From: Ramazzottius varieornatus
Lineage: Eukaryota; Animalia; Tardigrada
Assembly: GCA_001949185.1 (NCBI GenBank)
Contig: BDGG01000002.1
Span: forward strand, 7,182,448 to 7,246,447
Length of the DNA: 64,000 nt
Reading direction: 5' to 3'
Shown here one piece after another: positions 2,791 to 46,996 of this stretch (positions within the stretch are counted from its first letter, which is position 1; every line of letters starts with the position of its first letter). The notes beneath the pieces are model-generated. The model worked only from the letters and a program-made list of their open reading frames with translations. It did no database searches and was not told the DNA's origin. The position numbers were made by a program, and so were the translations under genes.

Positions 2791-3538
2791 TTATTGTGCA
2801 ACTTCAAGTGTAACAGCGATGCAAGCCAGTTGATTTCCGGTTGAGTCTGTCACCGTTATTTTCCCTTCGTAGGCTCCCTGAAATTGACCCACATGGACAG
2901 TCTAACAGCGCAAGCTTCCACATTCGTCATAGAGTACCTCTGCCATCCAGCGTACGAAAGACGACATGTGCGGAATCTTTATAACTTTATTCACTGTGTA
3001 GGTCATTGCGGCAATTGGGCAGACGTTCTCAAACTCCGTGCAAATATCCGTGAAAGTGCTGCAAAATCGTGAAAGCATGTCAGTTGTCAGTTCTAGGACT
3101 TCTGGCTGAAGGAGGTAATGTCCGTTACCATGATCCAAATCTTCCTTGACATGGAATACTCTGGCCTTGCAAAAGACCCGCAGTCTTGTGCAAGTCAGTT
3201 CGCACTTCCAGTGGTCCATTGAGGTCCTGCTTCACTTCCACTTGGGCTGAGATGGTTATACTCCCGTCCAACGATATCACATCGGGCGTTATTTTCAGTT
3301 CTTTTACTTGTATTGTCTCGTTAGCCGAATCGACACCTTGGAGAAACAACACGTTCGTATAGATTCAGCAACAAGTCTGTGATGTATCAAACAATACAAC
3401 ATCGAGGTCTGTTAAAGGAGGTGAACTCACGAACTTACTGCAAGATCGCCATGTGAAGGCCAAGGTTTGTGGCAGATAACTTAGCTGCCATGCGACAAGG
3501 ATAGCCAACATAGAAGGTGGGAAAACAGATGGTTCCAT
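2791..3538 (-). CDS. GM2 ganglioside activator-like ML-domain lipid-binding protein
   Basis: Four exons: signal peptide+FTWRSC, ...IPCQGRFGS|CTFTDICTEF...CPI, last exon GAYEGKITVTDSTGNQLACIAVTLEVAQ*; Cys pattern of GM2A/ML family. Confidence 0.75.
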
Positions 3539-4577
3539 GGGTAAGCACTTTGTCTCGGCTTGGTGGTAGGAGAAGCCTTCTCCAAATAGTGGACGAAGAA
3601 GATCCAATTGGCTTTCGACAGCAGAGAAGCCTTATATTAGCGCTCTTCTCTTCCGCAGATCGGCTTCTCGTTTCATTGAAGTGTACGATGAATCTGGGCT
3701 CGGGACGAGCACGTAGAGCAACTGCCGATGGGAGCCGAAACCTGCAGATGGAAAACTTCCATGAACGTGACGGTAAACTTGCGTAATGTTGCCAGGTATG
3801 GCCTGAAAGCACGCCCTGGAGCATTGTATTTTCCAGTCTATAAGCTGACGCGTATAAGCCTGGATGGAGTGGCGAGTTTGGTAAATAGGAAACAATCCGG
3901 TTCATGATGGGGTCCCCCTTTTAACGTAGGCGTCAACTCGTTAGGTATTGCTTTTTTGCCGTTTAAAGATTCTCTTGCAGTTTTTTTGCGTTACAATATC
4001 GGCAGAACATCCCGCCCCAGCCAGTTTGCGGTTCCCGCTGACTCCAAAAAAAGGTCGCCGAAAATTCAAAGATTCCCTGATTTTTTCAGCGTAAAATATG
4101 CGTAACATTAAATCACTCTCAGTTTACGCTCCAATAACGTCATAGAGACGGCGCGAACGCAGCGTTTAACTCAAGACAGAAACGTCGTCTGTGAATCCAG
4201 CGGGAAATTATGGCGACCCGTGATTTTTTTGCGACGGGATTTTTCCCGTATCAAAGGGTCCTCGAGAGCGTCGCCGCGTTGTCGCTGTAGGACAGCTGCA
4301 CCTGCGAGTTCATTATAATGCGTATGGCACAAAAAAGTGCGTGATGAGGTGAGGAGTCATCTGAGTGTTGTCTGGTCCGATCGATAAGGTACTCGAAAAT
4401 CCGACGACCCCGTGATAGATTGCAGAGCGAGCCCGAAGAACCAGGTTAATGAGAGACAAGGCGGGCTGGAGGATGTGGCGGTCCTCTGCCCAATTACGCA
4501 CCAGCATCATGTTGTAGCAAACAGTGATTGGCTTGACCATTCGGACAAGCCACATCATTGGTCGCGCTTACGTCACA

Positions 4578-4585
4578 TGACGTGG
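4578..4585 (+). promoter_or_regulatory. Candidate UPR element TGACGTGG about 120 bp upstream of the LMAN1 ATG
   Basis: Exact match to XBP1/ATF6-type UPRE consensus; nearby CCAAT/ATTGG boxes; LMAN1 is a UPR target in mammals. Confidence 0.4.
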
Positions 4586-4705
4586 CATCTGGGCCATCGA
4601 GGCGAGTTGATTGTTGATCAGCCTGAAGACGATTAAAATTTCAACAGCTGGCTGGTTAGTTGCCTTGAATTTGTGAAGTGGTTACCACCTGTTCTTCCTG
4701 CAAAG

Positions 4706-7325
4706 ATGGCACTTTTCTCCATAATTTGTGCCATTCTTACCGTGTTCTTCTTGAATTATGCAGCCAGTCAATCGCAGTACAGGAGGTTGGAGTACAAGTA
4801 CAGCTTTAAAGGGCCGTACATCGTACTGAAAGACAACACCGTACCATTCTGGGACGTCGGAGGCCGTAAGTAAATTCATGTCAGTGTTCCGTGAGAGTTG
4901 ATAAAAGCTCGTCTCCCTTACAGATGCCATTGCCAGCGATGATCAGGTCCGGCTCGCACCGTCGCTCAAAGCCCGAAAAGGTGGGTGCCAACGAGGATGA
5001 GACTCACAGGAGTGATTCAACAGAGAAATGCGAAGAAAAGCTGAATCATTCTCAATTAGGATGATAGCTGGTAGCGTTACCACTATGTATAGCGGTACCA
5101 GCTATCACCGGAAGTTGTCTGTTTCTCGTGCAGACATCCGGAAGTTGTCCCTGTGAGTCAGCTACATCGTACAAGTGGCTGGCTGTCTGTTTCAGGTTAT
5201 ATGTGGACGAAAGCGCTGACAAGTTTTGAATGGTGGGATGTGGAAATGTCGATTCGCGTGTCCGGAAATGGTCGAATAGGAGCGGATGGACTCGTAAGGA
5301 TTATAACCCACGCTGCTTCCTCCCAAGTTCTGTTGGGTTAGGGTTGACATCGTGAATATATTTTTAGGCCTTTTGGTACGCGACCGACAGGATGCAGGAA
5401 GGTGATGCTTTCGGCAGCCGTACCTCATGGAATGGTTTGGGACTTTTCTTTGACTCGTTTGACAACGATGGGAAGGTAGGCCGGAAGTGATAGCATTTGA
5501 CTGTAGCTCGAGTTTGTAAGTAATCTAGCGCTTGTGGATTCTTGACAGATGAACAATCCTTACGTCTACGTCATCCTTAACGATGGTCGGAAGGTTTTTG
5601 ATCACGAAGCGTAAGTCCCGAAGTCAAATGCTCTTCTAACAAGCAATGCACTAACCAGCTACGATTGCAGGGACGGAGTTAACCAGCAGCTCGGCGGATG
5701 TTTACGGGACTTCAGAAATAAGCCATTCCCTATCAAAGTCAAGATCGAGTACTACCACAACGTTCTCACCGTAAGTGGTCTCTTTAGCAGTCCTGTGCTC
5801 CCGTGTGAGACAGTTTTAAGTTTCGCTGACTTGAATGCTTGCTATAGGTTCTGATGACCAATGGACTGACCGCTGATGAGACTCCCGAGCTTTGTCTTCG
5901 TGCGGAGAACGTCTTCCTGCCTCGAAGTGCTTACTATGGTCTGTCGGCAGCCACCGGAGGTTTGGCCGATGATCACGACGTGCTGTCCTTCATCACCACC
6001 AGTCTTCACGACCAAAGTCAAGAGGTAAGAGGTCGCGGATAGTTTTCCCTTTAGTTCATTATCCATGGTTCTAACTGGGAATGTCTTTGTTCTATAGCGC
6101 AGCGTACAAATCTCGCAGATGGAACGCCAAAAGCTGGAAGCTCAGTTCAGGGACTACAATGAGAAGCTAAAAGCCCAACAGGAAGAGTACTTAAAACAAC
6201 ATCCGGAGAAAGCGGCGCAACACCAGCAGCAGCAGATGCAGCAACAGGGCAATACCGGTACACAGGTAGGCTAACACATCTTAAATAGGCTAACTTGCCT
6301 GTTGATATTTCAAGGTTTGATTTCATGTATGTGTAGTTTGAGAATCCTCAAGACCGAGCTTTTCGTCAAATTTTCGACGGCCAGCAGTTCATCCACTTGG
6401 CTGTCCAGCAACTCAACAAGCGGATTGACGAGATTATCGGTCGTCAGGAGCGAACTCTTTCTGCAGTGTCCGCGTTGTCTTCTGGACAAGGTCAGGGGCA
6501 GGTGGTGGCTGCGAACGGTAAGCACGTCCGTTCATTTGGAATACTTGGCTGCTCAGATGTGGAATATCTTCTGTTGTTGTAGCAGCTCAGTATAACCAGC
6601 CGCCAGCAGCAGCAGGAGCGGGCGGATCTGTCATACAGCGTTATGAAGTGGACCAGATACTGCGAACCCAGACGGAACTTCAAAATGCACTCCGTGATAT
6701 CAGGTATTCGTTCGGTTACTTCTCATAGCTTTGTTGAAGGTTTAAGCCTGAAATTCCTAGCGTTCGATATTATTGTTGAATACGCCTGTTATGTAGAGCT
6801 TTTTCGGCGGATATCCAGACGAAGATTACCAACCTGCAGCACGTCCAGAGCCAGCAACCCGCGAGCTATCAGCAGGCAGGACAGGGACCAAGTCTGACGG
6901 AAGTTCGAGATGCAGTCAATAATGTTCGACAGGATACCGCTGCCATTCTGGCTCGTCCACAGGTATTTCCGCTCTACATCAAATTTGCAGTCATGAACGG
7001 TTTTGTAGACCACCGTACGTAGTTAGATATCGTTGAACTATGGCTCTATTGAGGGTCTTGTCCTTTTCTTGCAGCCGGTAGCCTCATGTCCACAGCCTAA
7101 TTGCATCAATACGCTATGGTTCGGCGCCTTCATCGCTGTGCAGACTGTGATATTCGTGGCGGTTAACTTATTCAAGTAAGTGCACTCGTCCTGTAGGTTG
7201 TCTTGGTCTTTCCTGGGGAAATTTAGTCTACTGAATACATTAATTTTGAATACTCTTGGTTGTTTGTGATTGGGGTACGTTATTGCAGGGGGTCGGGAGA
7301 AAGTAAAAACAAGAAATTTTATTAA
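4706..7325 (+). CDS. LMAN1: ERGIC-53 L-type lectin cargo receptor
   Basis: Signal peptide, RRLEYKYSFKGP, GRIGADGL, FDSFDNDG, YGLSAATGGLADDHDV, coiled-coil stalk, TM segment, C-terminal KKFY*. Confidence 0.93.
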
Positions 7326-37100: not shown

Positions 37101-40100
37101 AAATGAAAATTTGAGTCAATTGTGCAGAGAATAATCCGTTTTCGTTTTCAAGATAAGCTACTCGAGGGCTGCTTATCTTGAAAGCGAAACTTCGTAATCC
37201 ACTTTCAAGATCAACACAATCAACGGAGTTTTATGGGCTTTCGTGAGGAGGATTATTAATTTAATTGACCGAGATGTTCGGTGCTGAAGAAGAACACAGG
37301 ATATGTGGGCGCCGTTTTTTAGGGCCCATTGGATGCATGGAGAAGTAATACGTCCGACATGCCCAGTTTTCTTCTTCTTAGGATCACAGCAGGATGGCAG
37401 GTCCTGTGGCTGCCACAGTGGCGCACGAGATGGGTCACAACTTCGGAATGGAGCACGATTTCACCGACTGCCAATGTCTAGACGATCGATGCATCATGAC
37501 GCCTGCTTCTGTGTAAACCTCGATTAATCATCCTTCCTTTATCGTCTGTTTAATATCAGTATGAAAACCTAACGACTATCCTTTCTTTACAGGGGACAAA
37601 CTCCCTCGAACTGGTCTTCGTGTTCGCGGAAGTACCTCGAAGATAACCTTGCACGTGGTATCGGTTCCTGCCTGAAACGTGCGCCGCAGAAAGTAGAAGG
37701 AGCTTACTGTGGTAATGGGTTCCTTGAAGACGGAGAAGAGTGCGACTGTGGGCCGGATGAGTTTTGTCACAACAAGTGCTGCATAGCTGCTGCCTGCAAG
37801 CTTTCTGTTAATGGTAACATGTTCTTTGAAAGCAGTTGTAATGAAGGCGTAATGTACTGATTGGGCCTTGTTGTTCTGTTTATAGCCACATGTGGACACG
37901 GAAGCTGTTGCGATCTCGATACTTGCTCACCAAAGAAAGAATCGACGGTTTGTCGCGAACGCACTTCCGACGAGTGCGACTTGCCGGAGTACTGTGATGG
38001 GAAAGTCGGGACTTGCCCGCATGACTTCTGGAAGGATGACGGGACAACGTGCCGCGATGGCCAAGTAAGAAAAATATGTGAGCTCGGTGAAACAGACTCC
38101 ACCAGATCGTTCTCCCAAGTGGGGCACGTTTTCACTGATATAGGCTACGAGCGTGGGCCATTTAGTCAAACGATCTTTTTGTGTTTGTTTGTCGAGCTCA
38201 GAGCCGAGTTCCGGTTTGTTCTTGTGTTGAGACTCTAACTTGGGTTTACATTGTAGGCATACTGCGCGAATGGGGCTTGTAGAACCCACAAAGATCAGTG
38301 CGCCTACTTGTGGGGGAGTACGGGTAACGTGGCGGACGACAAGTGTTTCGAGCTGAACGTGAAGGGGAATGCTAACGGGAACTGCGGGCGAGATCGCGTA
38401 AACGAGAATTATACCATGTGTGCGGTGCGCGACACCAAATGTGGGCTGCTTCACTGCACCAGCCAAGTCGAGCGGCTGGCGATAGGCGCGGAAAGCGCAA
38501 CTTCCGTCAGCCAGTCATTCATCCCGGCAAGAACCACCTACATCAGCTGCAGGTATTTCCATTCTCAGTCTCGAATAACCGATAAAACCGATATTGTACA
38601 TGGGAGACAAATATAGGCCAACCTGTCCAGCAGGATATTCGAAAGTTACTTGACAGGGTGGTCGAAAATTTGAATTTAATTTTTTTTCACGGACTTGCAT
38701 ACACTATGCCAGACTTTTATCACGAGTTCCCGGTATGCAGGTTGATTCATGGCTTGTCTAGTCAGTTTTCACGTACCTGCATACATTTGGTTCGGTATTT
38801 GTCGGCGCGGAGAAGTATGCAGGTGGGTGAAGAGTGTGTTGATCTGCTGGCCGCCCAAATCCGATAGCTTTTCTTGTAATGACAATTTCCATTTACAGTA
38901 CTTGGCATTTCTTCAATGTTTCTATGTTGATATGTGCGTGGGCTTGGTTTTAGGGCGGCATATGTCGACTTTGGGCTGGAAGTGATGGATCCTGGCATGG
39001 TGCCCAATGGAGCGAAATGTGGCGAGGACATGATGTGCTACAACCAAGTGTGCACGCACATCTCCAACGTACCACGCAAGTGCTCTGCTAGCAGTTGTAG
39101 CGGTCATGGCGTTTGTAACAACCTGGGACATTGTCACTGCGATGCTGGGTACGCGCCACCCGACTGCTCGTACAGCGGCTACGGTGGCAGCATCGACAGC
39201 GGACCGGCCAACAGCTCCGACTCGTATCGACGTCTTCGAGACGCCATGCTGGTTCTTTTCCTTCTAGTCTTACCGGTCGTTGTAGCGGTGCTACTCGTAT
39301 ACTTCATGAGACATCGAATCAAGAAATGGCTGGAGATGAAGAAGAAGCATGGCAGAAGCTCTAGCAGGAGTAAACCGGTAACGACGAAGCCAGTCGAGAA
39401 AAAGAAGGTACAGAAGATCTCAGGTGGTTTTCCGAAGAATGGTGGACCGCAGAGGCAAAAGAGCGTTCGAGGGCAGCCAATTTCGCAGCCCATCGCTTTG
39501 GCTACTTCAAACGGGACCAGCGGCACAGTGGTGGCCATGAACATGGGGAATAGTAGGTTGACTAACACGTACCTAAATGAAACCTGGCCGATAGAGAGAC
39601 CTACTGGCCCGATTTACGTCAACGAGTTGGCAGCTACTCCACCACCGTTACCTGCTAAACCTCCGAAAGCTGTCCGCGACTCTCCTCAGGTAACGAAAAT
39701 GTCCACATCTCGTAGTTGGAATTCGGAAGCTCAGCAAACGACTTTGACAAGATTGTCCTCTCAAGCGGCGCATGTTTCCTGTGGCCGAGAGCGTGCGTCA
39801 CTTGGAGAAACGCTCTTGTCGAATTTGCTTGCAGGAACCCCAGTTTTGGACTGTAAAGAGCTCATTATTTGAGGGGAGACAGGACTCATTTCTCTCAATT
39901 TGGCTTGTTATTTTAGGTCTTGCATCAGCTTGCCAACAGTCATTCCCAACCTGTGGTGCCTTCAGAGATCTTCGAAGCTGAGGACACCTTGAAGCCTATT
40001 AGACCGGCTCCCGCGCCACCGCCGAGACCTGCCATCAGTCAGCCTGTTAGTCGGAATTCCTCCAGTGCTAGTTCGAGGCGAAGAGCCAGACCTTCGAATC

Positions 40101-40291
40101 GGCCCCCTGATCCTCCGACAAAAGCCCGTGCGGAGCAAGCCACACCGTTACAATCGGAGGATGACAGTTCGTCAGATTCGTCTCTGATGGGCAGAACACG
40201 TGAAAACCCAGGAGAAAACATACCAAAAAATTCGCTCGTCAGCGAACTTACCAGGAAATTTGAAAGCCAAAGAAATGGTCGGATGCAGTAG
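34170..40291 (+). CDS. ADAM metalloprotease-disintegrin, ADAM12/meltrin-like
   Basis: Signal peptide, prodomain with RTKR furin site, FVELVLVAD, zinc motif [16 protein letters not shown] turn, disintegrin ECDLPEYC, Cys-rich and EGF regions, TM, Pro-rich tail. Confidence 0.93.
35974..36045. repeat. Family A palindromic repeat in ADAM intron
   Basis: CAACTGGCGCAT-N22-GTGCGCCACTTGGAGAACCGATCT. Confidence 0.7.
36592..36700. repeat. Family A palindromic repeat in ADAM intron
   Basis: CAATTGGCGCAC...GTGCGCCACTTGAGATAACGATCT with a small internal duplication. Confidence 0.7.
36721..37255. mobile_element. Non-autonomous TIR element (MITE) with TA ends, in ADAM intron
   Basis: TAGTCCTCCTCACGA...TCGTGAGGAGGATTA; second copy at 10277-10743. 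Confidence 0.88.
38081..38198. repeat. Family A palindromic repeat, full length, ADAM intron
   Basis: AGCTCGG...AGATCG..CAAGTGGGGCAC-N25-GTGGGCCATTTA..CGATCT...TCGAGCT. Confidence 0.8.
38693..38824. repeat. Two Family B fixed-spacer palindromes in ADAM intron
   Basis: ACTTGCATAC-N30-GTATGCAGGT (38693-38742) and ACCTGCATAC-N30-GTATGCAGGT (38775-38824). Confidence 0.75.
39728..39834. repeat. Family A palindromic repeat in ADAM intron
   Basis: GACAAGATTG..CAAGCGGCGCAT-N19-GTGCGTCACTTG..CTCTTGTC. Confidence 0.7.
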
Positions 40292-40766
40292 GAATTTTGG
40301 AACGAGTTTCTCTTCTAAATGTGAAGGACGGACCGGTTTCCAGAACTTGAGTTTTATTGAAGTTTTTTTCCATTCGTTTTCTTTCTTTCATTAGTTTCTA
40401 CTTTTTACCTTACGTTACAAAGTTGTATCCGTCTTAAAACTATGCTGCTCCCATAATATCTCGCGTACTTGTCGCTCTGCTCACAGCTGGACAATTCCAC
40501 AGTCACACCACACGGAGGAACAAAAGTTTTTAGAATCCATACAGAAGCCGGTAGTAACTGCGAAAAAAATATTGTAGAAGTTATACTACAACTACAGTGT
40601 ACTGTGAGAGAAATCAACGGAGATTACGAACCGAGAAAGCACCGATAAAACCTGAACTGCATATGAAATGGCCACCGTTGAGGCAGGAACAATCCTCAAA
40701 CACAAGTAAGAATAAAAATAAAACATTATACTCAGATCAGAACTGAATGTAGAACTTTCGGTTTGG

Positions 40767-43554
40767 CTACTTCTTGCGACTTCCCATTCTCTTTCCCACT
40801 GTTGAGGCATAGAAGACGAGCTCTTTCAGCGGAATGCTGTAACTCACAACGCCAATGCAATACCTCCATACATTCGAATAATTGAATATCTGTCTTACCT
40901 ATGGAGAGTTTTGGCAGCGTATCCATTCTTCTTCTTCGGGAAGTACAAGTCAACTTCGGTCTTGTTGCCTTTCCCGTCCACCTTGGAGATGGTACCTTCT
41001 TCCTCATTCAGCGGATCAGCATCAGTCAGGTACGTGGCTATCTGACCAACTGTGACCAAGTCAGGAACGCGCTTGATACTTTTCATCTCTACGGAGGGAG
41101 TTTCGTCTGAGCCGCTAAACCACTTGACGACGTATTCGTCGCCTCTCGCCTTCTTCTTCACCGTCGCCGGGTAGTAGATCATCGCTTTTCCTTGTTGCCA
41201 CTTCACAAAGACCACCTCACCTGACAATCAAACTGTGACTAGACCATCGAAGTTACGTAGAAGATGAATATTCGAAAAAAAACCCAGAAAACTGGAAGGT
41301 CGGCAGACAAACTCGACAAGATCGCTTTCGCAAGTGGCGCACGCTCCCAGTCAACAACAGTGAAAAAGTGCGGCACTTGAAGAAACCGGCAAGGATGTTC
41401 TTCCGTGTGGCGCGCGCTTGCAGCCAGCAACAGCGTTGACGTGTGCCACGTGGGGAAACAATCTTGTCGAGTTTGTTAGCCGAGCTTGCAGTTTTTATAT
41501 TGGCCTAAGAAAATCGTTTCTAGGCTTTTTTCATCGAAAAACGGAATTTTGCTTGTACCTGGTGCAATCTCTTCGACGGCAGAAGCGTTACTCGGACTAC
41601 GAGTGCGGCTACGTGATAGAGACTTCGCAGCGATGAGATCTTCCTCGTCATTGATGAATTCTTCGGCAGAGTCGACATCAATTACGCTAGCCTTCTTTGT
41701 CCGAGCTCCGGACCGTTCGGCAGGTCTTCGTGAGCCACTGGTGCTGGGAGTACCGTCGTCGTCCGACTCGTTCAGGACCATCTTCTCAGAGCCCAGGTAT
41801 TCTTCTTGCGAGTTGAAGTCAAAGCAACCCTTAGTGCGTTCCTCTTCGTGGATTCCTAACAAGTTGAATTCGAATCTGTAGGCACGAATCGATCAGCGTC
41901 TGATAAAGCCTCATATAGCGGATCTGGTTTTCCATTCTGTGCGTTCACTTACTCTGAAATCTTATTTTTGCCGCCCTGAATGTCAAACTCGACTTCATAT
42001 CGCTTCGGCACGTCCCTTCCGCCGATGACGCGAATAACGCGACCTTCGCGGTTACGGCTACTGGCAGGCACGTCTCCTCCTCGCAGACGGGAAACTTGCA
42101 CCATCCTGCCTGGCTGTAGCCAACCGGAAGGACGAAGAAGCTCGTGCTCCAGACGAACCTCGCTCTTATTCATCCCGAAGAACTTGATCAAGACTTCCCT
42201 GTGTCACACAACACATAACAAAATGCAGTCGATTGACGAATTAGGTTTTTTTATCCTTCGAACTTACCCGACTCTGGCGCTGTTATACTTTTGTACAGTG
42301 GCTGGCCAATAACAGTTGTCCCGCTTCGCCAAGGTGTGGAATCCTACAGAAACTACAGACATGTTAAGGACAGAAAATGGACACCCGGTACTGGTAGTGA
42401 CATGAGGAGAAGGTTCTTGCCTGCTTTGAATACTTTTCCTTTCTCAGTCTGGCTTCGAGCTCGGTTCTCCGCTTTTGTTTCCGGGACGCCCTGAGTGGAA
42501 GAACCAGGCTTCGACTGTGCGAAAGTGCGGAAGCGATCCGCTAGTCCAGCTTGCGGTACTTTCTTCGGCGTAGGCTCTCCGGATCTGGAAGACTCATTTA
42601 GCGACCCTTCTTCTTCGTCTGAACTATCGCTAATCACCCGTTTATTTTTTCTGCCCATCAGCGAACTGACCGGCCTTTGAATGTACTCGTCATCATCGGA
42701 CAACGCGAAGTCCAGCTTCTTCGGTGTACCCGCTGGTAGACCAGTCTTCGCGTCCACGACTGTCACTTCCGTAGCAGTACCAGGACCGGAAGAACTGAAC
42801 GGCTGGCGAGCCGTCTTCGTGTCGTCCTCTGCTTCATCATCTTCGGACGTAGAAGAGATCGCGATGACTTCAGTAGCTTCTCTTGCCGCGCCCCAGTCTC
42901 GGTAGCTTCCGGGATGCTCAGATGACATGACTGCATCGAGGATGTAAGCGAAGCCCTTGTTATCGTGCTCCAGCTTCGTCAGTATGATGTTGTACTTTCT
43001 GTCGGGCTTGAAAAAGGCCTGCAGGACTTCGAGTTGCTTTGCTTTCGGTAGCTGGGAAAACTCCTGCGGAGACTTTGGACTTATATCGCCAAAGATCTTT
43101 TGCCCTACTTGGGCCAGTAGCTTGACTCCGCTCTTGTCAGCTACTTGAACCTGGACAACCAGAAGAAGATCAGCCAACGTACACCTGCCTGCTATCATAT
43201 GAAATGACCGTCAGACATCATGCACCTGCATACACCGGCGGTAGGTGTAGCTGCCGCTGTTTTTGTGTGCAGGTATACGTCGTCAGCTGGCGAATAAACT
43301 GGCATTTTCTATTGTCTGTATTCACTTACCATGACTTTGGAAAACTGCTGGATGCCCGTTCTCTGGTCGCATCTTCTGCAGAACTCGCCGTCGTACGTAC
43401 GCAGCTGACCACGACAGATGGAGCAGCCCGAGTACACAAACTCATCGTCCTGCTTGTCGATCTTTGGGAAATGGCAGTCAGCGACATGGTGTGTGTTTTG
43501 GGACTTTGAGTGTGAATGCACCGGCTTCGACGAGACTTCTTTCAGCGTCAACAT
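40767..43554 (-). CDS. Uncharacterised protein: N-terminal Zn-ribbon OB-fold-like domain plus two tandem Tudor-like modules separated by acidic/Ser-rich linkers
   Basis: FVYSGCSIC..FCRRC..|VQVADKSG (RPA70C-type pattern); VSVGFHTLAKRDNCYWPATV..VLIKFFG; GEVVFVKWQQGKAMIYYPATV..YVVKWF; exons splice in frame (one needs a GC donor at 42420), ending ..IPLKELVFYASTVGKRMGSRKK*. Confidence 0.7.
41300..41486. repeat. Two tandem Family A palindromic repeats in intron of the OB-Tudor gene
   Basis: Two arm pairs, each N25, sharing outer arms TCGGCAGACAAACTCGACAAGAT / ATCTTGTCGAGTTTGTTAGCCGA. Confidence 0.82.
43222..43275. repeat. Family B fixed-spacer palindrome (OB-Tudor gene intron)
   Basis: GCACCTGCATAC-N31-GTGTGCAGGTA. 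Confidence 0.65.
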
Positions 43555-43941
43555 GATGAAGGCAGTCCGAAGCGAACGCTGCAGAGAAGAGGATGGCTAC
43601 AGACACTACCTATCTTCCAGATTCATACTGCTGCTCGCCTAAAATAAGAGATACGTACAGTCACGCGTCTTGGGGCCCTTGTCCATCATGGTATCTGCTT
43701 TAGAGTCTACCAAGTACAACCATGTACATACCGTTGAAGTATTCTTGCTTCTCTATTGCAAGACTCAGGTGCTATACGCAGCATTCAGTGGAGTATCCAG
43801 CAACGCAATGAAGGATTAAAAGATTAGGACAGGAGAGTACGTGCTCATCAGCTGTAACACGCGGAAAAACACAACGGAAAATTTAAAATTCCTGAAAAAC
43901 TGCAAAGAGGCCGACGTCACGTCTAGTGGGATGACGTCATG

Positions 43942-44107
43942 ACGATGCGGGGCCGCACGGTTTGTTTTGATTTTCGTGTCGGCCCATCCCAACGCACCCC
44001 ATGGATCACCTGACCAGAATCTACGATGCGGGGCCGCACGGTTTGTTTTGATTTTCGTGTCGGCCCATCCCAACGCACCCCATGGATCACCTGACCAGAA
44101 TCTACGA
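43942..44107. repeat. Exact 81-bp tandem duplication in bidirectional promoter region
   Basis: 43942-44022 identical to 44023-44103, followed by a partial ACGA. Confidence 0.95.
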
Positions 44108-44211
44108 CCGAGTGGGCGATGTGTGCCACGTGGCCATCTGCTTTTGTTTGGGTGAGCTCTTGTCACCTCACGGTTTCAGCGTGGTCTCCTTCGTCTGAAT
44201 AGTCTCATTCA

Positions 44212-44496
44212 CAGCGGTGGACGGGTGATTTATTCAGCCTAATATCGAAAATCACGACACTGCCACCTACGACCCGTCAAGAACCGGTACAACAGGCAAT
44301 CTTATCATCAGTGCGCGAATTCGATCTCTACTGAACAAGAGACTTGGTGTTCGAACGACATTCAGAACGGTATTTTTTATTTGGAAGATATTGATGGACT
44401 GAGTGCCGTTCCAAAGTTGGGCTGTGCTTGAGGTTGCGAAGCCGTTCCGTGTTTTGGCTACTGTAACTTACTGAATAAATCACCCGTCCACCGCTG
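44212..44496. mobile_element. hAT-type non-autonomous element, 285 bp
   Basis: Perfect 26-bp TIR CAGCGGTGGACGGGTGATTTATTCAG and perfect 8-bp target-site duplication CTCATTCA (44204-44211, 44497-44504). Confidence 0.95.
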
Positions 44497-44533
44497 CTCA
44501 TTCATGTTGTTTTAAATTCTTGCGCGTACCTGT

Positions 44534-44580
44534 CAGGTCACAGGTCACAGGTCACAGGTCACAGGTCACAGGTCACAGGT
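44534..44580 (+). repeat. (CAGGTCA)6+ heptamer tandem array upstream of cortactin ATG
   Basis: Six perfect units plus CAGGT. Confidence 0.95.
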
Positions 44581-44654
44581 GAATCTTGTCTCGTGGATAA
44601 TCTGGATCAAGGAGGAAGAACAAGGAGCTAGCAGTCGCGAATTTTTATCGGAAG

Positions 44655-46996
44655 ATGTGGAAGTCCCAGACGATGCCGAGTGTAGCAGTTCAGTCCAGCC
44701 AAGCTAGCGATGACTGGGACACCGATCCCGATTTTGTGGTAAGGAAGAGCCTTATGTTTTCCAAATGATTCCAGCTGTACCTTTGCAAGAGAAGATGTGA
44801 AGGCTATGTGATGGCGTATTTTGGACTGTTCTTCTTTTCAGAATGACGTTAGTGAGAAAGAGCAGCGCTGGGGCTCAAAAGCCGTCGCTGGCTCAGGCCA
44901 TCAAGAATCAACCGAGTAAGTAATGTTGGAACAGTCCATTTTCTTATTGCCCCGGCACACCCGCGCACATCTGAGCTGTCGTCGGATGTGCAAGTGCGTG
45001 ACTTTATTGTTCGTCTTCCGTAATTCAATTTTTCGTACTTGCAGCCTGAAGAAACTCCGTGAACAGGTGCAAGCAGACCATTCGAGAATTAAGCAGAAGC
45101 AATCTGAAGAAATGAACATCGGCTTTGGGTATGGAGGGAAGTTCGGCGTCGAGAAGGACCGAATGGACAAGGTACAGTACTTGTACAGTATACTGCAAAT
45201 CTGCAACGTACTACAGAGCGCTCGGTTAGCTCGCAGTTGGGAAACGTGAAAACCACAGTAAATATCTGGTCTGATTTAGAGTGCGATGGGAGCAGATTAT
45301 CACGCGCCTAAGGAGAAGCATACTTCGCAGATCGATTACCAGAAAGGTTTTGGAGGGAAGTTCGGCGTGGACGAACGTATGGACAAGTCGGCAGTGGACT
45401 GGCAGTACAAAGCGGACTCGAAGAAGCACGAATCTCAAACCGACTACAAGACAGGGTTTGGTGGTGACTTCGGTGTCCAGAAAGATCGTCAAGATAAGTC
45501 AGCAATGGGCTGGGACTACAAGGCGACTACGGAGAAGCACGATTCACAGAAGGACTACAAGACGGGCTTCGGTGGGGACTTTGGGGTGCAGAAGGACCGG
45601 CAGGACAAGTCCGCTGTCGGTTGGGACTATAAAGCCAGCAATGAGAAGCATGACTCGCAGAAGGACTACAAAGCTGGTTTCGGTGGAGAGTTCGGCGTAG
45701 AAAGTAGGCCTCAAGACAAGGCAGCTCTTGGGTGGGACCATAAAGAGGCGAAGGAGCAACATGCTTCGCAGAAAGGTGGGTGAACTTTCGAATGTAGAAT
45801 TAACACACTGAAGTTTTGGGATCGATCGGTGTATCTTTTGTAGACTACAAGACGGGTTTCGGTGGGGATTTCGGTGTCCAAATGGACAGACAGGACGCAG
45901 CGGCGGTCGGTTGGGATTATCGAGAGAAAACGGAGGCGCATGAGTCTCAAAAAGGTGCGTCTAGTATCACAACACAAAAGAAGAAATGAGTGTGAATTTA
46001 ATGCGCGTTGCTTTTCTAGATTATAAGACGGGGTTCGGTGGAAAGTTTGGTATTCAGAAAGACAGGCAAGATAAGTCGGCGGTTGGTTGGGACGAAGAGC
46101 AGAAGGAAAAACCTTATACATCTTCGGAGAAACCGAAAATCGAGAACGGTAACTTTGTCTTCTGATATTTCGACTCTGAAAAAGGTTGATGAATCTATAT
46201 TTTAGGTGCGGTGAAAGCAAGTTCGCTCCGCGCCCGGTTTGAATCAATGGCTGTAGACGAGAAGGAAGAAGCTGCCAAGCGGACGGAAGCCGAGCGCCAA
46301 CGTCGAAAAGAGCTGGAAGACGAACAGAAGGCGGCTGACAAGAAACTAGAAGAAGAACGTCAACAGCGTAATGCGAGAGAAGAGGAAGAAAGAGCGGCGG
46401 AAAGAAAGCGGTTAGGCATAGCTGACGACCAAGAAGAGGTCGAGGAAGAAAAGGAACTACGAGCACCAGCTCCTCGACAAGCATTCCGATACGACGCACC
46501 ACCTGGACAAATGACTGCAACACCCACATCGCCCTCTCACACGTCCGCGTTCAAGGCTCCAGCAAGAACATCGGATGTGGAAGTGAGATCAAGGAACCAT
46601 GCTGAGGACTCGCAGACTTTGGCGAGGAAGAAGGTGACCTCGCCGACGGAAAGTACGAAGAGCTCGGTGGAGGAGGATGAAGGCATGACTGCTGTGGCTC
46701 TTTTCGACTATCAAGCAGGTACGAACCGCAGTAACATAAACTCGTTTCAGCGTATAGCTGGCTACAGCTCATGTTAATCTGTTGTTTTATCTGTAGCGGA
46801 TGAGGACGAACTTACCTTTGAACCCGAGGATGTGATCAGGCATGTTGAGCAGTGTAAGTTGAACAGCTGGTGTCAAAGTCATAGGAGCAGGTATAACACT
46901 ATACCAGTTTTTGTAGTAGATGAAGGTTGGTGGAGGGGCGAATGCAACGGGAAGGTTGGGCTGTTCCCCGCAAACTATGTGGAAGTGAAGCAATGA
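44655..46996 (+). CDS. CTTN: Cortactin
   Basis: [12 protein letters not shown] acidic domain, 6.5 HS1/cortactin repeats ([21 protein letters not shown]), coiled coil, SH3 [20 protein letters not shown]. Confidence 0.96.

What the first reader, a model, noticed from the sequence alone, without database searches (positions are those of the whole stretch)
40767..43554. OB-fold/Zn-ribbon domain fused to two 53BP1-style tandem Tudor modules: candidate single-chain chromatin reader and ssDNA end binder
Seen: the N-terminal exons encode Y-x-G-C-x2-C-x11-C-x2-C followed by VQVADKSG and a helical segment; two later regions each hold a pair of beta-barrel-like segments starting VGFHTLAKRDNCYWPATV and GEVVFVKWQQGKAMIYYPATV. 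Established: the Cys pattern is typical of RPA70 DBD-C-type OB folds (also MEIOB, DDIAS, SHLD2), and the 53BP1 tandem Tudor begins G.RVVAKW..YFY.G and reads H4K20me2; in vertebrates 53BP1 and the OB-fold shieldin are separate proteins linked by RIF1. Inference: I know of no described protein with this architecture; it could couple histone methyl-lysine reading directly to ssDNA binding at breaks or in meiosis.
Basis: partly seen in the sequence, partly recalled or inferred. Interest (0 to 1): 0.85.

Follow-up and report, generated by a model that had tools for sequence, protein, structure and literature searches.

The report
Tardigrade zinc-ribbon protein with 53BP1-type Tudors
A tardigrade (Ramazzottius varieornatus) makes one spliced mRNA for a 661-residue protein that joins a zinc-ribbon, possibly DNA-binding, head to two histone-reader modules related to those of the animal's own 53BP1-like repair genes; I found this combination nowhere else, but the DNA-binding fold and the histone-mark reading are still unproven.

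Summary
One contig spans all seven coding exons, so the zinc-ribbon exons and the Tudor exons lie on a single transcript encoding 661 aa.

The genome is Ramazzottius varieornatus.

- **Tudor module 2 (exon 6):** 53BP1/Crb2-type. The profile-profile match to the Tudor exon of this animal's own 53BP1-like gene has probability 92%.
- **Tudor module 1 (exons 3-4):** homologous to the first Tudor module of a second 53BP1-like gene. It is 36% identical, with an intron at the same place and phase.
- **Origin:** the two Tudor modules appear to derive from a 53BP1-like gene, without its BRCT repeats.
- **N-terminal domain:** RPA70-DBD-C/OB identity is not demonstrated. Pfam, PDB profiles, hhalign and a shuffle test are not significant. 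Only motif register, language-model neighbours and secondary-structure order point that way.
- **Methyl-lysine cages:** degenerate, keeping 3 of 5 and 2 of 5 of the 53BP1 positions. H4K20me2 reading is not supported.
- **Family and range:** two more loci in this genome share the architecture, and one of them is disrupted. An exhaustive search of 1.84 billion representative proteins found no relative elsewhere.

Other first readers of this scan flagged what look like the sister loci on other pieces of the same genome. Verdict: a new domain architecture built from known domains, of moderate to high interest.

The parts
43732..43828 (-). 5'UTR exon. Its upstream limit is at least 43828, where the RNA contig ends.
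   Evidence: Joint 43637/43731 in 4 runs; X9 record 12 reaches 43828.
43330..43638 (-). Exon 1: 5'UTR plus CDS from the ATG at 43554. It encodes 75 aa, a putative first strand followed by a C-x2-C-x11-C-x2-C zinc ribbon ending ..FSKVM.
   Evidence: The MLTLKEV start is conserved at DNA level in paralogue B. Weak Pfam zinc-ribbon hits only.
43151..43329 (-). Intron 1 (179 nt, phase 0), which splits the putative OB domain. The same split is seen in paralogues B and C.
   Evidence: Joint 43148/43328 with cut +2.
42896..43150 (-). Exon 2, first 85 codons: VQVADKSG.. This is the putative second half of the OB fold, with strand, two helices, then two strands.
   Evidence: AF2 secondary structure E9-12, H13-23, H36-46, E53-63, E66-76 at pLDDT 53. 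The named ESM Atlas neighbours listed are OB families, at scores of 0.80-0.89. No Pfam or PDB match.
42421..42895 (-). Rest of exon 2: an acidic, Ser-rich linker with islands conserved in paralogue B (EVIAISSTSEDDE, LSDDDE, KRVISDSSDEEE, SGEPTPKK). These resemble SUMO-interaction or CK2-type motifs; that reading is inference.
   Evidence: A-versus-B alignment. No Pfam family.
42344..42420 (-). Intron 2 (77 nt), GC-AG.
   Evidence: Joint 42342/42420 in 4 runs. Only the +1 cut gives a canonical GC..AG.
42268..42343 (-). Exon 3: the first strands of Tudor module 1, barrel 1 (GFHTLAKRDNCYWPATVQKYNSARVG).
   Evidence: Aligns with the first exon of Tudor module 1 in both 53BP1-like genes. The downstream intron is at the same place and phase (GG|G) as in the chromosome-7 53BP1-like gene.
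41953..42198 (-). Exon 4: the rest of barrel 1 plus barrel 2 of Tudor module 1.
   Evidence: 36% identity over residues 2-80 to G000:C7:257464-257694, genome-wide E 1.2e-4. tblastn E 1.4e-6 in the small database. Alignment A5 has 11 invariant columns.
41559..41875 (-). Exon 5: second acidic, Ser/Arg-rich linker (FEFNLLGIHEEE..CFDF.., SVIDVDSAEEFINDEEDL).
   Evidence: The first 39 residues are 54% identical to paralogue B. No Pfam family.
40899..41220 (-). Exon 6: the complete tandem Tudor module 2.
   Evidence: Pfam Tudor_3 E 6.2e-5, 23.2 bits, below the 25.8 cut-off. The family profile finds the Tudor exon of the chromosome-8 53BP1-like gene. hhalign probability 92.4%, E 5e-7, 87 columns. AF2 gives 4+4 strands at pLDDT 56.
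40767..40836 (-). Exon 7 coding part: S-IPLKELVFYASTVGKRMGSRKK plus TAG. The conserved [IV]PLxELxF[YF]A probably packs on the Tudor module, followed by a basic tail; both readings are inference.
   Evidence: Joint 40836/40899. Conserved in paralogue B/P0002.
40495..40766 (-). 3'UTR, ending near 40495. It overlaps by about 15 nt the transcript of the convergent ADAM-like gene.
   Evidence: X9 record 12 ends at 40495; X9 record 11 covers 40000-40509.

Best explanation
This is a real, expressed, seven-coding-exon gene of the tardigrade Ramazzottius varieornatus. It encodes a 661-aa chimeric chromatin protein.

**Shown**
- A single spliced mRNA joins three kinds of region. The first is an N-terminal C4 zinc-ribbon domain. 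The second is two long acidic, Ser-rich linkers with conserved short motifs. The third is two tandem-Tudor modules.
- Both Tudor modules are homologous, in the same order, to Tudor modules 1 and 2 of the animal's own 53BP1-like genes. An intron inside module 1 sits at the same position and phase.
- The gene has no BRCT repeats.
- It belongs to a small family of three loci in this genome. No relative was detected elsewhere.

**Inferred**
- The gene arose when a copy of the Tudor region of a 53BP1-like gene was joined to a zinc-ribbon/OB-like domain.
- The protein docks on nucleosomes through its Tudor modules. It thereby brings the N-terminal domain, which binds either single-stranded nucleic acid or a protein partner, to chromatin, most plausibly in the DNA-damage response.
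- The linkers, which look like SUMO-interaction or CK2 motifs, add regulated contacts.
- Because the methyl-lysine cages are degenerate, the ligand is probably not the classical H4K20me2 read by 53BP1.
For: - **Transcript:** all junctions are spliced in 4 runs from 4 studies, and single contigs span all exons.
- **Organism:** P0002 is GAU97050.1 of R. varieornatus, on a contig of 4,740,345 nt. That equals the length of G000:C4, where it is encoded.
- **Tudor module 2:** Pfam Tudor_3 E 6e-5. Paralogue C hits DUF4537 at 26.5 bits, Tudor_3 at 1.6e-4 and 53-BP1_Tudor at 4e-3. The family profile hits the chromosome-8 53BP1-like Tudor exon genome-wide at E 2.5e-3. That exon passes Pfam cut-offs for Tudor_3 and 53-BP1_Tudor, and its best PDB hits are 53BP1. 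hhalign gives 92.4%.
- **Tudor module 1:** the exon 4 hit on the chromosome-7 53BP1-like gene has E 1.2e-4 and 36% identity. The intron is shared, and the alignments agree.
- **Family:** paralogue B matches exons 1, 2, 3, 5, 6 and 7 at 38-54% identity (43-47% on exons 1, 2 and 6). Paralogue C matches exon 1 (32%, E 2.7e-4 in a small database) and exon 6 (30%, E 2.7e-4 genome-wide).
- **Constraint:** dN/dS is 0.15-0.23 on the folded parts.
- **OB hints:**
  - The named ESM Atlas neighbours listed are OB families.
  - The secondary-structure order fits the second half of an OB fold.
  - Short local alignments to RPA70 DBD-C mostly fall in the expected register.
  - The zinc-ribbon entry of paralogue C beat all but 9 of 2000 shuffles.
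Against: - No significant sequence or structure match supports an OB fold. Pfam PF08646 finds only RPA1 in this genome. PDB profile searches are empty. hhalign gives P of about 0.07-0.14 per half. The shuffle test is not significant for the window's own exons.
- Both AF2 models are low-confidence (pLDDT 56 and 53), and the fold searches gave nothing.
- The cage residues needed for dimethyl-lysine binding are partly missing.
- There is no functional, localisation or induction data.
- The range outside Ramazzottius is untested at genome level.
Confidence: 0.55

Rival explanations
1. This is a BRCT-less 53BP1 decoy or scaffold. The functional core is the pair of 53BP1-derived Tudor modules. The N-terminal zinc-ribbon domain is a protein-interaction or oligomerisation module and does not bind ssDNA. 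The protein would compete with, or modulate, the two 53BP1-like proteins on chromatin.
For: - Homology is firm for the Tudor modules only.
- No statistical support for an OB fold.
- The genome has two 53BP1-like genes with several Tudor modules.
- From established knowledge, RPA70 DBD-C itself also serves RPA trimerisation.
Against: - The language-model neighbours of exon 2 are OB families.
- The D-x-SG strand motif and the zinc-ribbon position mimic DBD-C.
- The degenerate cages argue against simple competition for the same mark.
Confidence: 0.25
2. The Tudor modules are degenerate structural barrels that no longer read methyl marks. The protein would work mainly through its acidic, Ser-rich linkers, as a SUMO- or phospho-dependent adaptor or as a histone-binding acidic protein.
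For: - Only 3 of 5 and 2 of 5 cage positions are kept.
- The linker islands EVIAISSTSEDDE and KRVISDSSDEEE are conserved at 43% overall identity.
Against: - The Tudor exons show the strongest constraint, with dN/dS of 0.08-0.15.
- Three aromatic cage residues (W7, Y16, W33) are kept in module 2 in all paralogues.
Confidence: 0.12
3. This is not a functional fusion. It would be a decaying or chimeric locus, or a read-through of two genes.
For: Paralogue B carries an ATT at the homologous start, a frame-shifting C13 run, no exon-4 equivalent and a 19-nt duplication with a stop.
Against: - The window copy has an intact frame through all junctions.
- It is fully spliced in four studies, with single contigs across all exons.
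- dN/dS is well below 1.
Confidence: 0.03

Closest known systems
53BP1 / Crb2 / Rad9 tandem Tudor (Pfam PF09038, PF18115), including the two 53BP1-like genes of this genome (G000:C8 ~550.3-553.6 kb; C7 ~257.3-260.6 kb)
   Same: Both Tudor modules are homologous to modules 1 and 2 of the tardigrade 53BP1-like genes and lie in the same order. An intron is shared within barrel 1. Cage positions W1495, Y1502 and F1519 are kept as aromatics in module 2.
   Different: There are no BRCT repeats and no S/T-Q-rich N-terminus. An unrelated zinc-ribbon domain sits at the N-terminus. The D1521 and Y1523 equivalents are Ser in module 2, and the W1495 equivalent is missing in module 1.
   Same: A C-x2-C-x(10-11)-C-x2-C ribbon follows a short first strand. 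Next comes an h-x-V-x-D-x-SG strand, two helices and a beta hairpin. The order and register match DBD-C.
   Different: No significant sequence or structure match was obtained. The own-genome PF08646 search finds only RPA1. Paralogue C lacks the second CxxC. No DBD-A, DBD-B or trimerisation partners are implied.
TDRD3 and extended-Tudor/Tudor-SN proteins (OB-type fold plus Tudor in one chain; from established knowledge and PMC4152741)
   Same: These are precedents for an OB-like fold and a Tudor reader in one polypeptide.
   Different: Those use an RMI1-like or staphylococcal-nuclease-like OB and a single SMN-type Tudor that reads methyl-arginine. Here there is a zinc-ribbon domain and two 53BP1-type tandem Tudors, separated by long disordered linkers.
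53BP1-RIF1-shieldin axis of vertebrates (from established knowledge)
   Same: Conceptually it couples a chromatin reader to an OB-fold ssDNA binder.
   Different: In vertebrates these are separate proteins. Nothing here shows end protection, and no homology to SHLD2 was tested or found.

Membership tests
53BP1/Crb2-type tandem Tudor | Significant profile similarity to the family | tested here: met
   - **Exon 6 alone is sub-threshold:** Tudor_3 scores 23.2 bits against a cut-off of 25.8, E 6.2e-5.
- **The family profile links to a bona fide member:** it matches the Tudor exon of this genome's 53BP1-like gene with hhalign probability 92.4%, E 5e-7, over 87 columns.
- **That exon is itself a clear member:** it passes the Pfam cut-offs for Tudor_3 (34.2 bits) and 53-BP1_Tudor (25.6 bits), and its best PDB hits are 53BP1.
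- **Exon 4:** it matches the chromosome-7 53BP1-like module 1 at E 1.2e-4.
53BP1/Crb2-type tandem Tudor | Two consecutive small beta barrels of 4-5 strands each | tested here: inconclusive
   The AF2 model of exon 6 shows 4+4 strands, but mean pLDDT is 56. Foldseek and VIA-align gave no significant match. The weak Foldseek list is rich in UHRF1 and 53BP1 Tudor entries.
53BP1/Crb2-type tandem Tudor | Five-residue methyl-lysine cage (human W1495, Y1502, F1519, D1521, Y1523) | tested here: not met
   Positions were mapped through the 53BP1 PDB alignment and then the alignments.
- **Module 2:** W7, Y16 and W33 are kept. The D1521 equivalent is S35 and the Y1523 equivalent is S37.
- **Module 1:** the W1495 position is absent (AK-R). 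Y1502 is W and F1519 is F. D1521 is G and Y1523 is N.
53BP1 orthologue | C-terminal BRCT pair after the Tudor region | tested here: not met
   The transcript ends about 270 nt after the stop that follows exon 7. No exon hits a BRCT family. BRCT-bearing 53BP1-like genes exist elsewhere in this genome.
RPA70 DBD-C (PF08646) | Match to the family profile | tested here: not met
   - No PF08646 hit at E <= 10 for any exon of the three paralogues.
- The own-genome PF08646 search finds only RPA1 on C20.
- hhalign gives P of 0.07-0.14 per half.
- In the HMM shuffle test the window's exons gave p of 0.11 and 0.17. Only paralogue C exon 1 reached p of about 0.005.
RPA70 DBD-C (PF08646) | Four-ligand zinc ribbon inserted after the first strand | tested here: met
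   C-x2-C-x11-C-x2-C is present in the window and in paralogue B. Paralogue C keeps three Cys. This is motif-level evidence only; zinc binding was not tested.
RPA70 DBD-C (PF08646) | Five-stranded OB barrel with a helix between strands 3 and 4 | tested here: inconclusive
   - The domain is split by intron 1, and the joined sequence was not folded.
- The half-domain model has pLDDT 53, with the order strand, helix, helix, strand, strand.
- The named ESM Atlas neighbours listed are OB families at 0.80-0.89, which counts as a lead only.
- The two-chain prediction gave no answer.
RPA70 DBD-C (PF08646) | Binds single-stranded DNA | not testable with these tools
   This needs an EMSA or fluorescence anisotropy with the purified domain.

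The most novel reading that the evidence does not exclude
In a highly radiation- and desiccation-tolerant tardigrade, one polypeptide does what vertebrates need 53BP1, RIF1 and shieldin for. It would dock on damaged chromatin through 53BP1-derived Tudor modules and hold or protect single-stranded DNA ends with its own zinc-ribbon OB fold. It would be a lineage-specific repair innovation contributing to extreme DNA-damage tolerance.
Probability: 0.1. Interest if true: 0.9.

Novelty: new variant of a known kind. Interest (0 to 1): 0.62.

Why it matters
Ramazzottius varieornatus is a model for extreme radiation and desiccation tolerance, and the search for its lineage-specific genome-protection factors is active (Dsup, and TDR1 in other species).

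This is an expressed, constrained gene that recombines modules from the animal's own 53BP1-like genes with a zinc-ribbon, possibly OB, domain. It belongs to a three-locus family seen nowhere else so far. That makes it a concrete candidate for a new chromatin or DNA-damage factor.

It also documents how a repair-pathway reader was re-used by partial duplication and fusion. The hypothesis can be tested directly with ssDNA binding, peptide arrays, foci after irradiation and knock-down. If the N-terminal domain proves not to bind DNA, the gene is still a natural BRCT-less 53BP1-Tudor variant of interest for pathway-choice biology.

Tried and rejected
**Tools and steps not available**
- All work was exon by exon.

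**Homologue searches**
- The search for homologous proteins with exon 2 found nothing in the 134-425 aa range.
- With P0002 it found only itself.
- With a metagenomic RPA70 it found only 3 RPA70s.
- The metagenome scan for RPA70 exons returned 1 locus.

**Structure**
- The AF2 model of exon 6 (pLDDT 56) and of the exon 2 N-terminus (pLDDT 53) were too weak to use.
- Complex prediction on the exon 1 part, the exon 2 part and Zn gave no answer. It is neither support nor evidence against.

**Sequence tests of the OB idea**
- PDB phmmer/hmmsearch with exon 6, A1, A2, A3 and the paralogue C exons gave no significant hit.
- NCBIfam gave nothing.
- hhalign of exon 4 against the exon 6 family profile was not significant, although the short alignment fell in register.
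- hhalign and the HMM shuffle tests against RPA70 DBD-C were not significant for the window's exons.

**Other**
- The bacterial promoter/terminator scan is irrelevant for this eukaryote.
- The inverted-repeat scan of introns 1 and 5 found none at the settings used.
- Literature searches for RvY_08410, for tardigrade plus Tudor or 53BP1, and for OB-fold plus tandem Tudor found no description of this protein.
- Early on I guessed an insect genome from a neighbouring note. I dropped that once the assembly was identified.
Full report
**1. Gene model and transcript**

The finding lies on the minus strand. Splice-site reading gives seven coding exons:
- 43554-43330
- 43150-42421
- 42343-42268
- 42198-41953
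- 41875-41559
- 41220-40899
- 40836-40767, with TAG at 40769-40767

The phases close, and the junction codons are Gly, Gly, Glu, Gly and Ser. The product is 661 aa.

I laid Logan contigs of four RNA-type runs from four studies on 40000-44800. Every predicted junction appears as a joint in all four runs, and so does a 5'UTR intron (43639-43731). The joint at 42342/42420 reads canonically only as GC..AG. Two single contigs (X9 record 12, 2439 nt, 43828 to 40495; X5 record 9) cross all coding exons. The zinc-ribbon and Tudor exons are therefore on one mRNA.

The share of sampled words held by most runs (0.64) is close to the exonic fraction of the query. Low-depth contigs that keep intron 5 also exist.

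Everything below is exon by exon.

**2. Organism**

An exhaustive phmmer of exon 6 against 1.84 billion representative proteins found two proteins only. One is a 101-aa Logan fragment, 92% identical. The other is P0002, 43% identical, which is GAU97050.1 'RvY_08410-2' of Ramazzottius varieornatus on a 4,740,345-nt contig.

The window's assembly has 55.84 Mb in 200 contigs. Its contig C4 has exactly that length and encodes P0002. The window is therefore R. varieornatus, C2:7182448-7246447. The neighbours are a convergent ADAM-like gene and a divergent cortactin gene.

**3. A small family in this genome**

Six-frame searches of the genome and local tblastn find two further loci with the same layout.

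Paralogue B (C4:123.4-126.3 kb, minus strand) matches as follows:

| Window exon | Identity to B |
|---|---|
| 1 | 45-47% |
| 2 | 41-44% |
| 3 | 50% |
| 5 | 54% over the first 39 residues |
| 6 | 43% |
| 7 | 38% |

Paralogue C (C4:2.692-2.694 Mb, minus strand) has three recognisable parts. There is a zinc-ribbon exon (YVYEGCPECEKKL..C; 32% to exon 1, E 2.7e-4). There is a second-half exon starting VDVVDRHG. There is one C-terminal tandem Tudor, 30% identical to exon 6 (E 2.7e-4 genome-wide). The intron that splits the N-terminal domain is at the same place in all three loci.

A-versus-B dN/dS is 0.23 for exon 1 and 0.17 for the exon 2 N-terminus. It is 0.08 for exon 3 and 0.15 for exon 6. dS is saturated. 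This indicates long purifying selection on both ends of the protein.

Paralogue B is disrupted in this assembly in four ways:
- ATT where the window has its ATG
- a C13 run that shifts the frame before the zinc ribbon
- no recognisable exon-4 equivalent
- a 19-nt perfect tandem duplication in exon 5 that shifts the frame onto a TAA

The public model RvY_08410-2 starts inside exon 5.

**4. The Tudor modules**

*Module 2.* Exon 6 alone hits Pfam Tudor_3 (Crb2), E 6.2e-5, just under the cut-off. The Tudor exon of paralogue C hits DUF4537 (26.5 bits against 27), Tudor_3 and 53-BP1_Tudor.

A profile of the three paralogues (A1) searched against the whole genome picks up one extra locus, at C8:551270-551542 (E 2.5e-3). 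That locus is a 53BP1-like gene:
- Its Tudor exon passes the Pfam cut-offs for Tudor_3 (34.2 bits) and 53-BP1_Tudor (25.6 bits).
- Its best PDB matches are mouse and human 53BP1 Tudor.
- ORFs that read as BRCT repeats follow it; one gives a weak, sub-threshold Pfam BRCT hit.

hhalign of A1 against that exon gives probability 92.4%, E 5e-7, over 87 columns covering both barrels.

*Module 1.* Exon 4 has no Pfam hit. It does match C7:257464-257694 at 36% identity over 79 residues (E 1.2e-4 genome-wide). That is the first Tudor module of a second 53BP1-like gene, whose downstream ORFs also read as a BRCT pair.

The short exon before it aligns with window exon 3. The intron between them interrupts a Gly codon as GG|G in both genes, and the chromosome-8 gene has a phase-2 intron at the corresponding spot.

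*Conclusion on origin.* The window protein thus carries, in the same order, counterparts of modules 1 and 2 of the tardigrade 53BP1-like genes, without their BRCT repeats. The most economical reading is a partial duplication of a 53BP1-like gene's Tudor region, fused behind a zinc-ribbon domain.

**5. The methyl-lysine cage**

I mapped the human 53BP1 cage (W1495, Y1502, F1519, D1521, Y1523) through the PDB alignment and then the alignments.

| Human 53BP1 position | Module 2 (exon 6) | Module 1 (exons 3-4) |
|---|---|---|
| W1495 | W7 (kept) | absent (AK-R) |
| Y1502 | Y16 (kept) | W |
| F1519 | W33 (kept as aromatic) | F |
| D1521 | S35 (lost) | G |
| Y1523 | S37 (lost) | N |

Paralogue C keeps the Asp. 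Classical H4K20me2 reading is therefore not supported for the window protein. Some aromatic pocket may remain.

**6. The N-terminal domain**

That order is a short strand, C-x2-C-x11-C-x2-C, ..FSKVM|VQVADKSG, two helices and a hairpin.

Several independent local alignments to RPA70 sequences fall in the expected register, but none is significant:
- hhalign against the genome's own RPA1 exons, P 0.07 and 0.14
- hhalign against a small alignment of four metagenomic or MMETSP RPA70s plus RPA1, P 0.10 and 0.08
- BLASTP of paralogue C exon 1 against RPA1, E 0.006 for the single comparison
- a PDB 'Replication factor A' hit at E 1.3

The other tests were also negative:
- Pfam PF08646 finds nothing in any paralogue and only RPA1 in the genome.
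- PDB profile searches find nothing.
- In a 2000-shuffle test against an RPA70C HMM, only paralogue C exon 1 stands out (9 of 2000). The window's exons do not (216 and 342 of 2000).

Two weaker lines point towards an OB fold. Language-model features of exon 2 residues 1-85 have the OB families RMI1_C (0.89) and Rep_fac-A_C (0.87) among the three nearest clusters, with POT1 and CTC1 clusters further down at 0.80-0.82. By the tool's own calibration this is a lead only. AF2 on the half-domain gives strand, helix, helix, strand, strand at pLDDT 53.

A two-chain prediction of the two halves with zinc gave no answer. RPA1 has a phase-0 intron 2-3 codons from the family's phase-0 intron, which is suggestive only.

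I rate an OB fold as plausible, at about 60%. It is unproven, and ssDNA binding is pure inference.

**7. Linkers**

The A-versus-B alignment of exon 2 shows conserved islands in otherwise fast-evolving acidic, Ser-rich sequence. They are EVI(A/T)(I/L)SSxSE, LS(D/E)(D/E)DE, KRVIxDSSDEE and SGEPxPxK. A hydrophobic core followed by Ser and acidic residues resembles phospho-regulated SUMO-interaction motifs. That is my inference from general knowledge and was not tested.

The exon 7 motif [IV]PLxELxF[YF]A is conserved in paralogue B.

**8. Distribution and novelty**

No relatives were found in any of these searches:
- the exhaustive search with exon 6
- the length-limited word searches with exon 2 and P0002
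- the literature searches

'Ramazzottius-restricted' is therefore provisional.

Other first readers of this scan independently flagged two 'RPA70C-like OB plus 53BP1-like Tudor' loci and two unusual 53BP1 homologues on other pieces of this genome. I reached the same loci by search. Those notes are not independent evidence.

**9. Verdict**

The architecture is real, expressed and constrained, and I found no description of it. The Tudor half is well explained as derived from a 53BP1-like gene. The OB/ssDNA half and the H4K20me2 reading are not established. This is a new combination of known domain types in an organism where genome-protection novelties matter. Interest is 0.62.

Noticed in passing
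window 43942-44107: A perfect 81-nt tandem duplication (2.0 copies, 100% match) lies just upstream of this gene's first 5'UTR exon, in the divergent promoter region shared with the cortactin gene.
   Followed up: no
window 44534-44580: A (CAGGTCA) microsatellite of 6.7 copies, 100% match, next to the first RNA-covered stretch of the neighbouring plus-strand gene.
   Followed up: no
window 41194-41586: Low-depth RNA contigs keep the 338-nt intron 5, at depth 4-16 against 14-80 for the spliced form. Two contigs in run X2 break off at 41308 and 41344 into unrelated sequence.
   Followed up: no
window 40000-40509: The transcript of the convergent ADAM-like gene (disintegrin/EGF/TM, Pro-rich tail; last ORF 39920-40291) overlaps this gene's 3'UTR by about 15 nt. 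One assembler contig runs through both genes.
   Followed up: partly
L010 (G000:C4:120500-129500), minus strand, locus 2930-5830: Paralogue B (public model RvY_08410-2) has four disruptions. It has ATT at the homologous start codon, a C13 run that shifts frame, no exon-4 equivalent, and a 19-nt tandem duplication with TAA in exon 5. It is either a decaying copy or an assembly error.
   Followed up: partly
L018 (G000:C8:545000-554999, +) and L021 (G000:C7:252000-261999, +): Two 53BP1-like genes, each with two or three tandem-Tudor modules in series before ORFs that read as a BRCT pair. This is an unusual multiplication of the reader module.
   Followed up: partly
L028 (G000:C6:1402885-1402998, -): A zinc-ribbon-like relic (..RCPRCFASMRTYDHHY..) resembling exon 1 of the family, with an in-frame TAA. 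It may be a fragment of a fourth, dead copy.
   Followed up: partly
L002 (G000:C20, RPA1), locus 1317/1516: The genome's RPA1 has a phase-0 intron in DBD-C (..WRLMLN|AEVADFGG..), only 2-3 codons from the phase-0 intron that splits the family's N-terminal domain (..FSKVM|VQVADKSG..).
   Followed up: partly
P0001 (Logan contig, 1297 nt): The only close relative outside the assembly is a 101-aa fragment, 92% identical over residues 5-80 of exon 6. Its last ~25 residues look frame-shifted relative to the window.
   Followed up: no
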